DNA of 54,421 nucleotides from Octopus bimaculoides (GCF_001194135.2 NC_068994.1:53998208-54052628), one strand, 5' to 3'; shown: positions 35,811 to 46,619, counted from the stretch's first letter. Notes: a model not told the origin generated them from the letters alone. A program made the numbers and translations.

Positions 35811-36744
35811 AACTTTGGTACCACGCTACACCGAGTTGCTGAGAATTGGAAAAACAATCAGTTTGGAATACTGTGACATGCAACGTTGAACAAATTAATT
35901 TAGGTTCTTTAATACAATAAAAAAAATTTTAAACCCAGCTATCAATAAATAAAGATGGATGAGGGATGGATAAAAGAAATTTTACTCAATGGGAAGGAAT
36001 TTAAAAAGTAATGAACACTCCAAGGGAGGTAACTCACCAACATTGTTGGCCACAGACGTTTGAAAATGTTTTCAAGAAATTATTTTATTTGGCGAAAATA
36101 TATATTTATCCTTTATTAATTTATCTGACATGATATAAATATTTCTTGATTTCAGAAGAAACAGAAGTCTTACAGCGTTAAAAAGATAATGAACGCAGAT
36201 ATGATTTATCTACGGAGTTGTTTAAGAATAACCTTTTATGGTTATAACATTTTGCAAAGGAAAGTTTATATTTGTATGAATACGTTATTATAAGTAATTG
36301 TTTTATTTGTCTATGGAGAACATAAAGCACATTGTACGATTTGGACTCAGGATTGTAAGAAAAAATCCCAAACAAGGCGATAGCAAGAATAAAAAAAAGC
36401 ACTTGAATATCTCGTTTTTAATGAGTGTATGATAAGCAATGAGCTTGGCAGAAACCATCACCTTTCAAACAACATCGGTTCTGCTAGTGTTTGGGTAAAT
36501 TTGAACTAAGCGCTACAAGTTAAGGAAGTATAACAGCATTAAGTTGCACTAATCAATGATACTCATTCGCATCTATGCAGGCTTTTATAAGGAAATACCC
36601 TACAACTAATCACCAGCCATTTGCCTTACAACTTTGTATGTTGCAGACAGCTGTGGCTTTCTATTGAAGGTCTCACTGAATGTGATGCTACACATTTTGG
36701 ATCTAGTATAATATGGGTAAGTCTAGCGTTACTGCCTGGTGTAA

Positions 36745-37085
36745 CAACACTGTCAACTCTCTTGACTATGCCCCATATGGAATAGTCCAGTGGATTGACG
36801 TCTGGTGAGCTAGGAGGCCATGTATCTGGGAGAACACCATGAAGAAGATCAGTATGTATCCATGCTTGGGTTTTCCTAGCCTTATGAGATGGTGCAGAGG
36901 CTTGTTGGAAGACATAGTGTTCTGTTGCATACTCTGTCTATCTGGGGCCTCACAACTTTTTCCAACATCTCTGTGTAGACAGCAGCATTGATTCTTAAGC
37001 CCTGTGATAAAATGTGAAGAGGTATGACATCATCCTCATTGTGGATGGCTCCCAAAACCATCACAGTTGCTGGGAACATCATTCA
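36745..37085 (-). pseudogene. DD37D/maT-type transposase relic
   Basis: FPATVMVLG...GLRINAAVY.EMLEKVVRP and HKARKTQAW...WPPSSPDVNPLDYSIWG. Confidence 0.8.
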
Positions 37086-40625: not shown

Positions 40626-41097
40626 CATCTTAATACATGTGTTTGTGTGTGACTATGTCTTGGATACTATTATATGTGTGTTTGTATGTGTGTGCGCGTG
40701 CATGTAAATACATGTTCTGTATCTATATATGACATATATAAATATAATTGTATGCATGAATGCGTTTATATTGATAATACATTTCAATTGTAACTTCAGT
40801 ATTACAGAGTTGTTAGGTTTTGGTGAAGTGAGAAAGCAAGATATGTTTAGTGTAAACGTGTACATATTTTAAAAAATAGGGTCCTTACTTCATTAAAAAA
40901 AAAAGAGAATAAAAAAAAGAATCAGCCAAAATTGTTGTATGGAAACAGATCAAAGATAGATAAGAGAAAAAAAAAACCCCAAAAAAACATCTCTTCTGAT
41001 TCCTTGTCATTACAACAATTTTGTTGTTTCTTCATTTTCTTATTTCGTTGTATTTTGCTGTATGTATACACGCACACACACACATATATATAGATAA

Positions 41098-41225
41098 TAT
41101 GCATATTTTATATATATATATATGTAAAATGCATATATTTTATATATATATATATATGTAAAATGCATATATTTTATATATATATATATATGTAAAATGC
41201 ATATATTTTATATATATATATATAT
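41098..41225. repeat. Minisatellite, about four copies of AAATGCATATATTTT(AT)nGT
   Basis: Directly visible tandem units of about 30-35 bp. Confidence 0.85.
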
Positions 41226-41358
41226 ACACATAATACACACACATATATATATATATAATATGCATATAATATATATAAACGATGCTCTAAGCACAGAACT
41301 TTCTTTTGTTAATACTCTTTTTCCATGTCTAGTAACAGACTGGGAAGTATCATTTTTA

Positions 41359-42489
41359 CTATAAGCCTGGCTGTAAAGTACCATATACCTGAGGCGCCTG
41401 AGAGAGAGCATATCTCTGGGCGTGTGCTGTACTGTATTCCTGAGCCTGTGATTTGGAGTAAGCAGTAGATTGTGGTGTGCTGTACAGCTGAGGTTGTGTC
41501 ATGTTGTTCAACTGCGACATTGGCGAGGTGTTGTACAGCAAAGGAGAGCTGTACAGCTGTGTTGGTGGCGTGTTGTACAGTGGTGACTGTAGCATGTTAT
41601 ACCGCTGTGAACACTGCATCTTGTAGACATCTGACTGTGACAAACTGCACATTTGCGTCTCCGGTGTACCAAAGACGTCAGGCTGCTGTCTGTTATAAAC
41701 CTGCAATGGTGGTGTGCTGCACTTTGCCGACTGAGGTGTATTGTACAGCTCTGATGGCAATGTGCTGCTCAATAAGGATTGCGATGATTTGTACATTTTT
41801 GACAGCGGTGAAGTACATTCAGCAGTTGGTGGAGTACTGTATTTTGGTGACAACGGTGAAGAACTTTTTGGTGACTGTGGACTGGTGTACTTCTTGGGTA
41901 GAGATCCACTGCTTTCTGGCAATTGTGCTGCTTTGCTTATTTGCTGTTCTTGTTTGTCGTATTGTGCAAGTGGTAGGCTGTTCATCTGTGAAGGTGGAGT
42001 ACTGTACATTTTGGCGAGCTGCGAGCCATACATTTGCGACTGGGGAGTAGCATACATCTGTGCCTGAGGAGAGGCATACATTTTAGACAATTGACTACCA
42101 TACATTTGCGCCTGTGCTGCACCATGCATCTGAGTCTGTGGTGTACCATACATTGATGATTGTGGTGAGCTGTACATTTGAGACGGCTGAGAGATGTACA
42201 CCGATGACTGGTGTGGAGAATTGTACATGTCTAGCTGTGGTACATTGTACATCTGTGAAGGGGGTGTGCCATACATCTGCGACATGTTGTAGCGTTGTGC
42301 TGCCTGAGCCCTACTGTACATAGGTGACAGTGCACTTTTATTCATTTCAGACAGCTGTGTGTTATATTTTTGCAACACAGGTGTACAGTACATGTCTGGC
42401 TGTTTAGAATTCAATGATTGTGGTTGTGAGCTGCTATACATTTTTGATGGTGGCGTGCTATATATCTGCAGCAATGATGTATTGCTCAT
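41359..42489 (-). CDS. Uncharacterised 376-aa low-complexity protein of about 45 tyrosine-anchored octapeptide repeats (YSTPQSQM-like)
   Basis: Long ORF in a stop-rich genome; T-tract acceptor TTGTAAAG (exon starts 42530) with in-frame TGA just before the ATG; 24-nt periodicity with varied codons; 33 Tyr, no Trp. Confidence 0.85.
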   Translation of the reverse strand: MSNTSLLQIYSTPPSKMYSSSQPQSLNSKQPDMYCTPVLQKYNTQLSEMNKSALSPMYSRAQAAQRYNMSQMYGTPPSQMYNVPQLDMYNSPHQSSVYISQPSQMYSSPQSSMYGTPQTQMHGAAQAQMYGSQLSKMYASPQAQMYATPQSQMYGSQLAKMYSTPPSQMNSLPLAQYDKQEQQISKAAQLPESSGSLPKKYTSPQSPKSSSPLSPKYSTPPTAECTSPLSKMYKSSQSLLSSTLPSELYNTPQSAKCSTPPLQVYNRQQPDVFGTPETQMCSLSQSDVYKMQCSQRYNMLQSPLYNTPPTQLYSSPLLYNTSPMSQLNNMTQPQLYSTPQSTAYSKSQAQEYSTAHAQRYALSQAPQVYGTLQPGL

Positions 42490-45400
42490 TTGTCAGAGAC
42501 GTCTCAAAAAGTTTGTCAAAGTAGTAGCGCCTTTACAACAAAAAAAAAAGAGTTTGTATTTTAAATAGTATATTTACCAAAACACTTGATTTGGGCAGGC
42601 CAATAAGATATCCAACTCTGTTAAAATATTTCAATTTCTTGCCAACACTACTTTGGGTGTCAATTACATAATTTGACCCTATTCCAGATACTGAATTTAA
42701 CAGCAGGATCTATTTTTCTTTTCTTTTTTTTTTCACAGAATATATTTCCTTTTTTTTCTTTTTCAAATATTTCGTGTTGAATTTTCACAAAAATCGTTCC
42801 AATTAGTTTTTTTTGTTTTTCCTTTTTGATTTAGAAAGAAAATCTTTCTGATATAATTGTGAAATGATTTTTTTTTTCCTTTGTGTCAATTTCGTCAAGA
42901 AATATAATAAAAATTATAAAGTATATATGTACAACAAATGTATAAATTCCTTTAAAATAATTTCAATTCGCCAGCAAAATTAATTAGTGTAAATTGCATC
43001 AGAATGAACCAGATGTGATCTATTAGCAAGATTTTGTTTTCCTTATTTTAAAAATTTTATAGACTCAACGTATATTATTTTAACAGATTCGATTTTTTCC
43101 TTCCATTTAAATCATTTATATAAGTTATGTTTAAGTAGTAGGAACTTAAACGAAAATAATAATAATGATGATGGTTTCTTTATAATAAAATAATAATNNN
43201 NNNNNNNNNNNNNNNNNNNNNNNNNNNNNNNNNNNNNNNNNNNNNNNNNNNNNNNNNNNNNNNNNNNNNNNNNNNNNNNNNNNNNNNNNNNNNNNNNNNN
43301 NNNNNNNNNNNNNNNNNNNNNNNNNNNNNNNNNNNNNNNNNNNNNNNNNNNNNNNNNNNNNNNNNNNNNNNNNNNNNNNNNNNNNNNNNNNNNNNNNNNN
43401 NNNNNNNNNNNNNNNNNNNNNNNNNNNNNNNNNNNNNNNNNNNNNNNNNNNNNNNNNNNNNNNNNNNNNNNNNNNNNNNNNNNNNNNNNNNNNNNNNNNN
43501 NNNNNNNNNNNNNNNNNNNNNNNNNNNNNNNNNNNNNNNNNNNNNNNNNNNNNNNNNNNNNNNNNNNNNNNNNNNNNNNNNNNNNNNNNNNNNNNNNNNN
43601 NNNNNNNNNNNNNNNNNNNNNNNNNNNNNNNNNNNNNNNNNNNNNATTCCAAATTTAGCCGAAATCTTGATGGGAAAACTCGCTTTATTTCTTCAACAAA
43701 GCGCATCCAATATTTCTAAGAATGGAGTTCTCATCATTGTTCGCAATTACATCTTACCTATTCCCTCACTCTATTATTGCGGTCTTGTAATTCTATCCAA
43801 TATTAAAAATTTCTGATTCCTTAATTATTATTATTATTATTTTTTTTTCGTTTAGCTTAAAAAGAATTTTTCAATTAAAACGAATATTCAAAAAGAGAGA
43901 GACAATGTGTTTTTTTTTTTTTTTAAGTATAAATTCTACAATGGGTAGCGATGGTGGATACCGAAGTTAATTGTTAAGAATAAATAAATAATAAATAACA
44001 ATATTATATGTTAAAAAAAAAAAATAACCAACTTAATTTAAGAATAATTCAATATTTCCTGTGCATTGTTGTCTGTCAGAAATAAATGTCATAGAGTCCT
44101 TTCCTTATTGCTAGTCTTGGGGCTTGCAAGCATTTAGGTTAATGAGAGAAAATGTATTAAAAGTTGTTAGGAATTAAACCTAAAAGAGACAATAGACCAA
44201 CAACTATACCATCATCATCAACTCATAAGGAAATATATACCAACGAGGGAGTCTCGACTTGCTAGATATAATAGCCAAATCTCCTTCGAATCATACTAAT
44301 AGTGTTTTAATAAAATGAAGGACACACTGAATAATGTAGTCCAAGATATACTGCTTCAGCGTCTTTTGATCGATCGCAGTACGGATCGATCTGGATTGAG
44401 CTGGGGTCTTTACAAAAAATACAAAAATTGTGGGTCAATACAAGGCGAGAAGAGAATATATGAAAAAAAAAAAAAAAACAGTAAAAGAGATAAGAAAACC
44501 GGCAAATTGATTGCTTTTTTTTTTTGTTATTTTGTTATTTTTTTCCCAATACTTCTTTTTGAGATATAAATGTGTGTGTGTATGCTATTGTTTTGTTTTT
44601 CTTCACAGCTTTTCGTTGTCTCTCCAGCTCCCAGACAGAAATCGGTAAAAATTCCCTGTCCCTGTCAGACGTCGTCGACAGCCAACAATAAAAATTAATC
44701 CATCCGAGAGTTGTTGAAACAAGAAATCAAATAAAAATCAAATAAAATGAAATCTTCAGTCGAGATGGCTACGAGAGCGGTAAAAGAAAAAAAAAAGAAA
44801 GAAAAATGCCCCCAAAAAAGGGACCTCGACAAGAGATACTACACAACGGCAATAACAAAAGAGTAATTAATAATAATAATAATTAATATAACTTTTGCTG
44901 CAGTTATTGTTTTAGTTGTTGCTATTGGCAGGATAAACACTTTAACCCTTTCTCTACTGTCACGTCATCAGAGTCTCGTTTTCTTCTATCTCTCTTCTTT
45001 TAAGCAACTTTTCTAACAGAACAAAGCACTGGATGTGTCTGATGTCTGGCGACTCCTTTCTTTTCACCCCTATTTTTTTTTTCTTAAAAAAAAAAATAAT
45101 AATCCTTGCTTTTCTTCTTATGTTAAATTTTTTTGCGGGGAGAAGAAAATAAAAGCACCAGTAATAGTATAGAGGCTTGATCCCTTTTTAAGGCATATAT
45201 ATGTGTATCAAATATATACACACACACACCAGATAGATAGATATAATATATGAGATATATAATATATATATGTATGTGTGTGTGTGTGTATAGTCAGTTG
45301 TCAGCCTATCACAGTTCACCTTCGTAGCAAATAAAACATTTCTAAATTAATGTCAACGCAAAGAGTCCTGCCAACAATTGGCTGGCTTATTGCGGACGGC

Positions 45401-45679
45401 AAGGGAGATAACTGCCGACGACTCTCATATCTCTTACTCTCTCTTACTTTCACTCTCTCTCTCGTCTTACTTTCTCACTGTTTCATTCTCTGTCTCACAT
45501 TCTCACTTTCTCGTTTTACTGTCTCCCTCTCCCTCTCACTCTCACTTTCTATATTCATCTCACACAAACTACGAAGAACAGGCACACACACAAACAGCAC
45601 GTACACACACAAAAAATAAAAAACACAAACAAATAAAATAATTATATATATATATACATATAAAACAAAAGCTAGAGCG

Positions 45680-45723
45680 ACGCGTTGATGACGTCACGCC
45701 AAAGCGGTGTCTTGTCACGTGAC
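45680..45723. promoter_or_regulatory. Compact promoter-like motif cluster: ACGCGT, CRE TGACGTCA, CGCCAAA, E-box GTCACGTGAC
   Basis: Motifs at 45680-85, 45689-96, 45697-703 and 45714-23 within 44 bp, in a CpG-rich patch in AT-rich DNA. Confidence 0.65.
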
Positions 45724-46619
45724 CGGTGTTAGATGATGGCCTCTACCACTGGCTACTATTTTTTTTCCCATTAGAAAGCAACTTCTTTCTGCTTCAAAAA
45801 AAATAATATCCACGTTTATATTTTACTTTCTATTTGATCTTTACTTTTTCTATACTGTTGATATATTGAGATTATAACGTCAAACGGAATTACCTTCTTT
45901 TTTTCCACCTGTCTGCTGTTTTAATAGTGAGTTTTCATTTGTTAATTTCTGTTTCCCTTGCCTGCAGTGAAAGGATCTTTCATAAATATACATCGTAGCA
46001 ACACCCCTATATATTTATATACGTATATATATATGTGTATATGTATTTCCCCAGTGTCCTATCTATTGATTATTATTGTTCTTTCTCGCTTTTTTTCTTT
46101 AAAAAAAGAAAGGAAAACGAAAATTTGCTCTGTCCTTATATTTTAATTCTTTAAAGTAAACAAATTTTTTCAGCTTCTACTTTTGCCCATTCCATTAAAA
46201 CGTTCCTTGGAACGATTTCAAAATAACAAATTGACACAACTCAAATATTGAATATCGGTCTCTAAGTAAATTTACTTATATATATAGTATGTGTTTATAC
46301 ATATATATAATATATACACTGATTTAGCATGTCTCTTTACAACTGCTATTGTTCCATATAGTTGTTGAATAAGTTGTATGCCTTAAGTAAGGAGGTCAGA
46401 GCAATTTAACACACATTTTAATACATATATATATTATGTATGTATATATATATGTATATATATTATGTATGTATCCTCAGGTTGTTATATACCTAGCCAA
46501 CGCCTTCTATGTTACTTGTGTCAATGGTCCCACGTCTGCAGCAATATTTACAATAGCCAACACTATGGAACATATGAAAGCCTTATATAAGTTGTACTTT
46601 TCCATTTTTATTTACTGTA

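What the first reader, a model, noticed from the sequence alone, without database searches (positions are those of the whole stretch)
41359..42489. Unrecognised protein made almost entirely of about 45 Tyr-anchored octapeptide repeats, like a Pol II CTD with period 8
Seen: 376 codons with units such as YGTPPSQM, YSSPQSSM, YATPQSQM and YNTPPTQL; TACAT recurs exactly every 24 nt from 42005 to 42197 while other positions diverge, pointing to an old expansion kept under protein-level selection; 33 Tyr, no Trp, many S/T-P sites, no signal peptide, TM segment or folded domain; a QMY-rich N-half, an S/P/K-rich middle and an LY-rich C-part. Known: evenly spaced Tyr in Q/S/G/P tracts drives phase separation (FUS/EWS-type domains, Pol II CTD), and cephalopod reflectins are Met/Tyr-rich self-assembling proteins, though the reflectin motif is absent here. 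Inference: a lineage-specific intracellular condensate or structural protein switchable by proline-directed kinases, lying just upstream of NCAPH.
Basis: partly seen in the sequence, partly recalled or inferred. Interest (0 to 1): 0.85.

Follow-up and report, generated by a model that had tools for sequence, protein, structure and literature searches.

The report
Conserved octopod tyrosine octad-repeat orphan protein
The open frame is a real, single-exon octopus gene for a fully disordered protein made of 46 ancient eight-residue Tyr-anchored repeats; its sequence is kept almost unchanged between Octopus and Argonauta, it has no detectable relatives elsewhere, and its function is not yet known.

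Summary
Window 41359-42489 (minus strand) is a 376-codon ORF in Octopus bimaculoides. It parses into 46 units of about 8 residues, consensus Y-[S/N/G]-[S/T]-P-[Q/P]-S-Q-M. It has 33 Tyr, 24 Met, no Trp, 24 S/T-P sites and no hydrophobic segment.

It is a gene, not a decaying minisatellite. Argonauta hians has a syntenic single-exon orthologue 8.5 kb upstream of NCAPH. The two proteins are 84% identical, with three one-codon indels and the same unit order. dN/dS is about 0.05, and that signal is specific to this frame. All 33 Tyr, 22/23 Met and 17/17 Lys are conserved. The neighbouring NCAPH is only 58% identical between the same species.

It is not part of NCAPH, which has its own start exon 9.7 kb downstream. 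It is single-copy. Pfam, PDB sequences, 5.8 billion proteins (word search) and 1.84 billion representatives (HMMER) gave no homologue. AlphaFold2 gives pLDDT 38.

The function is inferred only. I read it as a multivalent Tyr/Gln/Met "sticker" array with phosphorylatable S/T-P turns, which self-assembles or serves as a docking scaffold. Expression, localisation and spread beyond Octopoda could not be tested.

The parts
41359..42489 (-). Complete coding sequence of the octad-repeat protein: 376 codons plus a TAG stop, in a single exon.
   Evidence: The ORF is listed. The syntenic Argonauta hians orthologue is 84% identical with dN/dS 0.05. The gene is single-copy in its own genome.
42442..42489 (-). 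First 16 codons (MSNTSLLQIYSTPPSK). Whether they are translated is uncertain.
   Evidence: In A. hians the homologous codon 8 is a stop (MSNISLL*MYSTPPSK). The first ATG that is in frame and usable in both species is O. bimaculoides Met17, at 42441-42439.
41962..42462 (-). N-terminal part, residues 10-176: 21 units, mostly M-Y-x-[S/T]-P-x-x-Q, with Tyr in nearly every unit.
   Evidence: Unit table. dN/dS is 0.05 in this part.
41698..41961 (-). Middle part, residues 177-264: rich in K, S and P (SPK/SPLSPK). Tyr-units and Ser/Cys-units mostly alternate, giving a 16-residue super-period.
   Evidence: Unit table. The lag-16 autocorrelation (0.25) is about as strong as lag 8. dN/dS is 0.055. All 17 Lys are conserved.
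41362..41697 (-). C-terminal part, residues 265-376: [L/V/R/E/A]-Y units that still keep the octad register.
   Evidence: Unit table. dN/dS is 0.044.
41359..41361 (-). TAG stop codon, at the same position in both species. Nucleotide similarity to Argonauta ends here.
   Evidence: The blastn alignment runs from window 42689 to 41354 and stops there. The C-termini are QPGL* and QPGM*.
42490..42689 (-). Conserved 200 nt directly upstream of the ATG. It is a putative proximal promoter and 5'UTR, with an AT-rich TATA-like stretch and a conserved GGGTCAnATTATGTAATTGACACC element.
   Evidence: The region is part of the 76.5%-identical block shared with A. hians. Reading it as a promoter is inference from consensus motifs.
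42690..43196 (-). Patchily conserved upstream region, for example CTGATGCAATTTA and AACACnnGAAATATTTGAA. It is probably cis-regulatory. It is bounded by the assembly gap at 43197-43650.
   Evidence: Alignment A4. Small syntenic blocks are listed.

Best explanation
This is a genuine single-coding-exon gene of octopods. It is separate from NCAPH and encodes a protein of about 360-376 aa. The protein is intrinsically disordered as a monomer and consists of 46 ancient, individually conserved octads.

Each octad reads as a short conserved segment, Q5-x6-Q7-M8-Y1, in which Gln, Gln and Tyr fall on one face and Met on the other. This is followed by a variable three-residue S/T-Pro turn or spacer (x2-[S/T]3-P4).

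I propose that the protein works as a multivalent array. The regularly spaced Tyr (with the preceding Met or Leu) and the Gln pairs would act as stickers. They would drive reversible self-association (condensate or labile cross-beta-like polymer) and/or repeated docking of a partner. The roughly 24 conserved S/T-Pro sites, and the Tyr residues themselves (14-17 of them in a [M/L/I/V]-Y-x-x-P context), would allow phosphorylation to tune the assembly. The Met residues might add redox sensitivity.

Shown here: that the gene is real, its anatomy, the selection on it, that it is predicted to be disordered, and that it is distinct from NCAPH.

Inferred only: self-assembly, phospho- or redox control, and an intracellular location.
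For: Gene reality:
- A. hians has a called 361-aa single-exon gene in the same place and orientation relative to NCAPH.
- The two proteins are 84% identical over 375 aligned residues, with only three single-codon indels.
- pN is 0.08 and pS 0.67, giving dN/dS of about 0.05 in all three parts of the protein. The same alignment read in shifted frames gives 1.6 and 5.1.
- Nucleotide similarity ends at the shared stop codon.

Old, frozen array:
- The positional orthologue is the best match for 41 of 46 units. Orthologous units are 78% identical at the nucleotide level; non-orthologous ones are 44%.

Sticker and spacer pattern:
- Substitution frequency by unit position is: 1 (Tyr) 3%, 5 5%, 7 5%, 8 10%, against 21-33% at positions 2, 3, 4 and 6.
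- Tyr is conserved 33/33, Met 22/23, Lys 17/17, and S/T-P sites 22/24.

Disorder and cytosolic type:
- AlphaFold2 gives mean pLDDT 38 and pTM 0.13 with no secondary structure.
- No Pfam family matches at E<=10.
- No hydrophobic segment is present.

YxxP motifs:
- There are 16 in Octopus and 20 in Argonauta, against a shuffle mean of about 4 and a maximum of 11.

Yardstick:
- NCAPH is only 58% identical between the same two species.

Separate from NCAPH:
- NCAPH has its own Met exon ([10 protein letters not shown]...) at window ~31653. The annotated NCAPH proteins of both species start there.
Against: - There is no expression, localisation or biochemical evidence of any kind. The own-genome records are withheld, and no transcript carrying this product was found.
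- The A. hians model comes from a pipeline that mixes ab initio, RNA-seq and homology evidence, so it does not prove transcription (PMC12682272).
- The AlphaFold2 run used only two sequences, so a low pLDDT cannot exclude a fold that forms on assembly.
- Generic phase-separating tracts usually conserve composition rather than exact sequence. The near-invariance here may therefore mean a more specific mechanism than sticker-spacer condensation.
- [S/T]-P-x-[K/R] full CDK sites are absent.
- Only one orthologue could be examined.
Confidence: 0.45

Rival explanations
1. It is a tyrosine-kinase substrate and docking scaffold that works like the substrate domain of p130Cas. The disordered array of [M/L/I/V]-Y-x-x-P sites would be phosphorylated by Src/Abl-type kinases and would then recruit many SH2-domain adaptors (Crk/Nck type). 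Assembly would be driven by those adaptors, not by the protein alone.
For: - There are 16 (Octopus) and 20 (Argonauta) YxxP motifs. Of these, 14 and 17 have a hydrophobic residue at -1, far above shuffled expectation.
- Tyr is 100% conserved and the -1 residue 90% conserved.
- The Cas substrate domain is likewise a roughly 300-residue proline-rich disordered YxxP array (PMC3983058). It phase-separates with its adaptors once phosphorylated (PMC8791637).
- The Abl preference for I/V/L-Y-x-x-P is from my own knowledge.
Against: - There is no SH3, Src-binding or C-terminal domain to bring the protein to a kinase or an adhesion site.
- Pro at position 4 is among the less conserved positions (21% changed). 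Q5 and Q7, which are irrelevant to pYxxP docking, are nearly invariant.
- Units that lack Tyr are conserved just as well.
Confidence: 0.2
2. It is an intracellular structural precursor that becomes covalently cross-linked, in the manner of vertebrate small proline-rich proteins and involucrin. Transglutaminase would link the many Gln and Lys residues, and peroxidase or tyrosinase the Tyr residues, to harden a tissue such as sucker lining, skin or beak-forming cells.
For: - Gln makes up 14% of the protein and is 88% conserved. All 17 Lys are conserved.
- The protein has a proline-rich octapeptide periodicity, no signal peptide, and its whole ORF in one exon behind a TATA-like promoter. This resembles the gene layout of SPRR and involucrin, which I cite from my own knowledge.
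Against: - Cross-linked envelope precursors evolve fast and vary in repeat number (my own knowledge). Here the unit number and sequence are frozen, with dN/dS 0.05.
- No tissue data are available.
Confidence: 0.1
3. It is a free-standing mimic of the RNA polymerase II C-terminal domain. It would be a nuclear array of Y-S-T-P-type units that binds or titrates CTD-reading and CTD-modifying factors.
For: The unit composition (Y, S, T, P, S, Q) and the dense S/T-P sites resemble the heptad. The tight conservation is CTD-like.
Against: - The period is 8, not 7.
- There is no YSPTSPS and no Y-[S/T]-P at all.
- The Pfam Rpb1 repeat model does not match even at E<=10.
- No nuclear localisation signal is evident.
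- Conserved Met and Gln have no counterpart in the heptad.
Confidence: 0.07
4. It is not an independent gene. It would instead be a non-coding 24-nt minisatellite with a chance open frame, or an alternative 5' exon giving NCAPH a long N-terminal tail.
For: - Low-complexity repeats can leave long open frames. For example, the 24-nt minisatellite at L002 is open in all six frames.
- The ORF is on the NCAPH strand, upstream of it.
Against: - Purifying selection is frame-specific, and the start region and stop are conserved across octopods.
- The other five frames are closed.
- The stop codon is conserved in position, with similarity ending there.
- NCAPH has its own start exon, and annotated proteins in three species begin with it.
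Confidence: 0.03

Closest known systems
FET-family (FUS/EWS/TAF15) low-complexity domains
   Same: Disordered and S/Q/Y-rich, with regularly spaced Tyr acting as stickers. They have no charge blocks and are regulated by phosphorylation.
   Different: There is no [G/S]Y[G/S] or SYGQ motif and only 2.4% Gly. There is no RRM or zinc finger, because the whole protein is the repeat. The strict period is 8, with Met before Tyr. Residue-level conservation is much tighter.
RNA polymerase II CTD heptad array (and Spt5 C-terminal repeats)
   Same: A long tandem array of a short Tyr-anchored, S/T-P-rich unit that is highly conserved unit by unit. The unit is a plausible platform for a combinatorial phosphorylation code.
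   Different: The period is 8, not 7. The heptad consensus and Y-[S/T]-P are absent. It is not attached to a polymerase or elongation factor. The Pfam Rpb1 repeat model does not match.
p130Cas/BCAR1 substrate domain
   Same: A disordered, proline-rich stretch of about 300 residues with about 15-20 YxxP motifs (PMC3983058).
   Different: It has no SH3 or C-terminal targeting domains. The units here are evenly spaced octads with conserved Gln and Met, which Cas lacks. There is no sequence similarity.
Methionine-rich low-complexity domain of yeast Pbp1 (ataxin-2), from my own knowledge
   Same: A Met-rich disordered tract whose self-association could be melted by Met oxidation. Here there are 24 Met, 14 of them directly before Tyr.
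   Different: Pbp1 is not a tandem repeat and has folded Lsm/LsmAD domains. The relevance is purely by analogy.
Cephalopod reflectins
   Same: Cephalopod-restricted, Met/Tyr-rich, self-assembling and phosphorylation-controlled.
   Different: No reflectin motif is present and there is not a single Met-Asp pair. The protein contains abundant Ala, Leu and Lys, which reflectins lack. No Pfam hit was found.
Other octapeptide-repeat proteins found by the search, for example Hyalella azteca XP_018014219.1 (FNTPQSAR units) and bacterial YGSSSAEL-repeat proteins
   Same: Period-8 repeats with an aromatic anchor. These gave the weak HMMER matches, with E from 1e-9 to 1e-3.
   Different: The matches are confined to the repeats and to composition. 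These proteins carry unrelated N- or C-terminal domains. They show convergence, not homology.

Membership tests
Condensin kleisin NCAPH (Pfam Cnd2, PF05786) | Match to the Cnd2 profile, or being an exon of the NCAPH transcript. | tested here: not met
   The ORF gives no Pfam hit. Cnd2 matches lie only at window 15117-29195. NCAPH starts with its own Met exon at ~31653, and annotated NCAPH proteins lack the octads.
RNA polymerase II CTD-type heptad repeats | Tandem Y-S-P-T-S-P-S heptads (Pfam PF05001) at the C-terminus of Rpb1. | tested here: not met
   The period is 8. YSPTSPS occurs 0 times and Y[ST]P 0 times. No Pfam hit at E<=10. The ORF stands alone.
FET-type (FUS/EWS/TAF15) low-complexity domain | Degenerate [G/S]-Y-[G/S]-Q repeats joined to an RRM, RGG and zinc-finger module. 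| tested here: not met
   [GS]Y[GS] occurs 0 times and SYGQ 0 times. No RRM or ZnF was found.
Reflectin | Reflectin motifs [M/F]-D-x5-M-D-x5-M-D, and near absence of A, I, L and K. | tested here: not met
   The motif count is 0 and the MD dipeptide count is 0. The protein has A 22, L 31 and K 17.
Cas family scaffolds (p130Cas/NEDD9/EFS) | An array of multiple YxxP motifs in a disordered substrate domain. | tested here: met
   There are 16 and 20 YxxP in the two species, against a shuffle mean of about 4. The protein is predicted disordered.
Cas family scaffolds (p130Cas/NEDD9/EFS) | An N-terminal SH3 domain and a C-terminal Cas-family homology/FAT-like domain. | tested here: not met
   No Pfam domain of any kind was found. 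The ORF is bounded by in-frame stops on both sides.
Phase-separating or self-assembling low-complexity protein (a functional class, not a homology family) | Demonstrated concentration-dependent condensate, hydrogel or fibril formation that depends on aromatic residues. | not testable with these tools
   Only the sequence grammar could be shown: evenly spaced conserved Tyr, polar spacers and predicted disorder.
Lineage-restricted (orphan) gene of Octopoda | Orthologues in octopods and no homologue outside them. | tested here: inconclusive
   An orthologue is present in A. hians. No hit was found in the protein libraries or in the Sepia pharaonis NCAPH locus with its 10 kb upstream. However, the libraries also lack the A. 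hians protein, and no squid, vampire squid or Nautilus genome could be scanned.

The most novel reading that the evidence does not exclude
Octopods carry a previously undescribed class of protein: a free-standing, ultra-conserved array of 46 'strand-turn' octads (a Q-x-Q-M-Y face plus an S/T-Pro turn). The array would fold only on assembly into an ordered polymer, such as a two-octad, 16-residue-per-rung beta-roll or a cross-beta stack with Gln and Tyr ladders. It would be switched by a combined Ser/Thr-Pro and Tyr phosphorylation code. In effect this would be a new structural repeat with its own 'code', not just another sticky low-complexity tract.
Probability: 0.2. Interest if true: 0.8.

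Novelty: new variant of a known kind. Interest (0 to 1): 0.6.

Why it matters
Tandem-repeat disordered proteins are usually thought to be constrained in composition and to change quickly in sequence and repeat number. This one is the opposite. It is a whole protein made only of short repeats, and every unit has been held nearly fixed between two deeply diverged octopod lineages, more tightly than the essential condensin subunit next door.

That makes it a clean natural test case for what is actually selected in Tyr-sticker repeats: spacing, neighbouring Met and Gln, and phospho-sites. It is also a candidate cephalopod-specific component of some cellular assembly.

The protein has no domain and no homologue, so domain-based annotation says nothing about it. 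The conservation evidence gathered here is what shows that it deserves experimental work.

Tried and rejected
Searches that found no homologue:
- Pfam at E<=10 gave nothing.
- The PDB sequence search gave nothing.
- Word-indexed searches of 5.8 billion proteins, with the single sequence and with the two-species alignment, gave nothing.
- The exhaustive HMMER search of 1.84 billion representatives gave only 25 weak matches (best E 1.6e-9). All were to unrelated period-8 repeat proteins and were rejected as convergence.

Own-genome and look-up searches:
- The own-genome search found one extra locus (L002). It is a near-perfect 24-nt minisatellite open in all six frames, and I rejected it as a paralogue.
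- Exact-sequence look-ups of seven alternative start variants were not on record.
- A look-up of the 369-aa Argonauta form was not on record.
- The own-genome NCAPH record is withheld.

Other species:
- O. vulgaris and O. sinensis NCAPH loci were fetched. The 10-kb upstream flank ends inside a shared retroelement at the point equivalent to window 35067, so the expected orthologue position was out of reach.
- Searching those genomes by handle is not possible.
- The Sepia pharaonis NCAPH locus gave no tblastn hit.

Other checks:
- Rfam on the whole window gave nothing.
- Literature searches for octad peptide strings and for cephalopod octapeptide repeats found nothing relevant.

Ideas considered and rejected: an NCAPH N-terminal exon, the antisense Cys-rich ORF 41469-42050 as the real gene (the codon-position pattern contradicts it), reflectin, and a secreted matrix protein.

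Full report
**What is there.** The window is from Octopus bimaculoides. Its NCAPH exons match XP_014768156, and the window maps to G000:C14:53998208-54052628 in a 2.34-Gb assembly. On the minus strand, 41359-42489 is a 376-codon ATG-to-TAG frame. An in-frame TGA lies two codons upstream of the ATG.

The product has 33 Tyr, 24 Met, 68 Ser, 53 Gln, 42 Pro and no Trp. Tyr spacing is 8 residues or a multiple of 8 in 26 of 32 intervals. I parse 46 units, of which 39 are exactly 8 residues. The consensus is Y-[S/N/G]-[T/S]-P-[Q/P]-S-Q-M. Residue autocorrelation peaks at lags 8, 16, 24 and 32, at 0.19-0.26 against about 0.07 elsewhere.

There are 24 S/T-P sites and no hydrophobic segment; the maximum 19-residue hydropathy is -0.21.

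**Is it coding?** Internal evidence already pointed that way.
- The other five frames of the region carry 5-30 stops.
- The ORF is 46% GC in a 36% GC window.
- Across the 39 regular units, codon position 3 is much less conserved (0.48 bits) than positions 1 and 2 (0.74 and 0.78 bits).
- Units are only about 47% identical to one another at the nucleotide level.

The decisive evidence came from synteny. The NCAPH protein of Argonauta hians was retrieved, and its genomic locus was fetched. That locus shows a called, single-exon, 361-residue gene with no Pfam family, 8.5 kb upstream of NCAPH on the same strand. Its translation is plainly the same protein. tblastn gives 83% identity over the full 376 residues.

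In a global alignment the two proteins are 84% identical, with three one-codon indels and the same unit order. Differences by codon position are 53/23/157. Nei-Gojobori estimates are pN 0.08 and pS 0.67 (near saturation), giving dN/dS of about 0.05. The three parts of the protein give the same value, and the bootstrap range of pN/pS is 0.09-0.15. Reading the same alignment in the two shifted frames gives ratios of 1.6 and 5.1, so the constraint belongs to this frame only.

Nucleotide similarity between the species starts about 200 nt upstream of the ATG and stops within five bases of the shared stop codon. Most of the surrounding intergenic DNA does not align. The positional orthologue is the best match for 41 of 46 units, at 78% against 44% identity. 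The array was therefore complete before the Octopus-Argonauta split and has not been homogenised since.

As a yardstick, NCAPH is 58% identical between the same species. The fossil minimum used for this split is about 29 Ma (PMC12682272). The saturated synonymous sites suggest a much older divergence.

**It is not NCAPH.** NCAPH has its own first coding exon ([14 protein letters not shown]...[15 protein letters not shown]...) at window ~31653-31459, which is 9.7 kb downstream of the ORF's stop. Annotated NCAPH proteins of O. bimaculoides and A. hians begin with that exon, and the O. vulgaris gene model starts at it. The Cnd2 profile matches only exons at 15117-29195.

**Start and promoter.** In A. 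hians, codon 8 of the homologous frame is TAA (MSNISLL*MYSTPPSK...). The first ATG usable in both species is therefore O. bimaculoides Met17, at 42441. The N-terminal 16 residues are uncertain.

The 200 nt upstream are conserved about as well as the CDS. They contain an AT-rich TATA-like stretch and a GGGTCAnATTATGTAATTGACACC element. Patchy conservation continues for about 700 nt, up to the assembly gap at 43197-43650. I read this as a local promoter, which is inference. A short non-coding upstream exon cannot be excluded, because both species have pyrimidine-rich AG sites 20-55 nt before the ATG.

**What kind of protein.**
- No Pfam family matches at E<=10, and no PDB sequence matches.
- The two word-indexed searches of 5.8 billion proteins found no homologue.
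- The exhaustive HMMER search of 1.84 billion representatives found only weak hits, all to unrelated period-8 repeat proteins.
- The gene is single-copy in its genome.
- AlphaFold2 on the two-sequence alignment gives mean pLDDT 38 and pTM 0.13 with no secondary structure. This is consistent with disorder, although the alignment is too shallow to exclude a fold that forms on assembly.

The protein libraries also lack the A. hians protein. Absence from them is therefore weak evidence for lineage restriction. The Sepia pharaonis NCAPH locus, including 10 kb upstream, has no match. In O. vulgaris and O. sinensis a shared retroelement pushes the expected position beyond the 10-kb flank I could fetch.

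**Pattern of constraint and mechanism.** Substitution frequency between the species depends strongly on position within the unit:
- Tyr1 3%, position 5 5%, position 7 5%, position 8 (Met/Leu) 10%.
- Positions 2, 3, 4 and 6 are 21-33%, and mostly S/T/G/A/P exchanges.

All 33 Tyr, 22/23 Met, 17/17 Lys and 22/24 S/T-P sites are conserved. Read along the chain, this gives a conserved five-residue segment, Q5-x-Q7-M8-Y1. Gln, Gln and Tyr sit on alternate positions, and so on one face if the segment is extended. A variable x-[S/T]-P turn follows. The middle part shows a 16-residue super-period in which Tyr units and Ser/Cys units mostly alternate.

My best reading (inference) is a multivalent sticker array. 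It would self-associate and/or dock a partner repeatedly. The S/T-P sites, and possibly Tyr, would act as phospho-switches, and the Met residues as possible redox sensors.

The conservation is much tighter than composition-level constraint. I therefore give real weight to an ordered assembled state or to specific readers.

A notable alternative is a Cas-like tyrosine-kinase substrate. There are 16-20 YxxP motifs, 14-17 of them with a hydrophobic residue at -1, against about 4 expected (PMC3983058, PMC8791637). However, Pro4 is less conserved than Q5 and Q7, and no targeting domain exists.

A cross-linked structural precursor (SPRR/involucrin-like) fits the Gln/Lys content and the gene layout, but not the slow evolution. 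A CTD mimic fails the motif tests.

**Novelty and verdict.** Its inference of protein-level selection is now demonstrated. Its functional idea remains a reasonable but untested hypothesis.

The gene is a new family, with no detectable homologues. It belongs to a known general kind: Tyr-anchored low-complexity repeat proteins. It has unusual properties: the whole protein is the repeat, the period is 8, Met-Tyr pairs recur, and every unit is conserved individually. Expression data and a wider cephalopod survey are the obvious next steps.

Noticed in passing
window 45660-45960 (minus-strand orientation), matching L005:628-960: A 334-nt block is 80% identical between O. bimaculoides and A. hians, with a nearly invariant core of about 115 nt. 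The core contains GGTCACGTGAC (an E-box/CLEAR-like site) and TGACGTCA (a CRE). It lies 3.2 kb upstream of the ORF in Octopus and 9 kb upstream in Argonauta. It is probably the promoter of a divergent neighbouring gene, or a distal promoter or non-coding first exon of this gene. There is no Rfam match.
   Followed up: partly
L002 (G000:C17, around 9015971-9016279): A near-perfect 24-nt minisatellite is open in all six frames. One frame reads YSSPSTFL units, and this gave a weak match (E 3e-5) to the octad protein. It is a chance resemblance. It does illustrate how a 24-nt satellite could seed such a protein.
   Followed up: partly
L005:9953-10000 (A. hians), homologous to window 42442-42489: The Argonauta copy keeps the first ATG but has TAA at codon 8, followed immediately by ATG. 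This gives either a 7-codon upstream ORF with re-initiation or a shifted start. The annotated model starts at the next Met.
   Followed up: yes
L003:1-2670 (O. vulgaris) and L006:1-2720 (O. sinensis): Both species share a retroelement between NCAPH and the point equivalent to window 35067. Its pol ORF (RT-RNaseH-integrase-like) is 525 aa and open at the locus edge. O. bimaculoides lacks this element at that point. It kept the expected orthologue out of reach.
   Followed up: partly
window 36629-37082, minus strand: A Tc1/mariner-type transposase remnant (…PSSPDVNPLDYSIWG…) lies in the intergenic region between the octad gene and NCAPH.
   Followed up: no
window 41084-41277: A TA-rich 34-nt tandem repeat (4.3 copies, 93% matches) starts about 80 nt downstream of the stop codon. 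It carries the only TATAAA-type hexamers. No canonical AATAAA is seen in the first 450 nt, so the 3' end of the transcript is undefined.
   Followed up: partly
window 43197-43650: An assembly gap (run of N) sits 700 nt upstream of the ORF. Argonauta sequence aligns on both sides of it (43747-43651 and 43046-42978), so some regulatory sequence is probably missing from this assembly.
   Followed up: no
L003:10001-73710 (O. vulgaris NCAPH model CAI9732690.1): The O. vulgaris NCAPH gene model spans 63.7 kb but encodes only 363 aa. The other octopods have 651-722 aa. It looks like a truncated annotation.
   Followed up: no
P0012 (Hyalella azteca XP_018014219.1): This amphipod protein has a roughly 240-aa N-terminal region followed by about 17 F-N-T-P-Q-S-A-R octads. 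These closely resemble individual octopus units such as YNTPQSAK. It is likely convergence, but it is the nearest look-alike found.
   Followed up: partly
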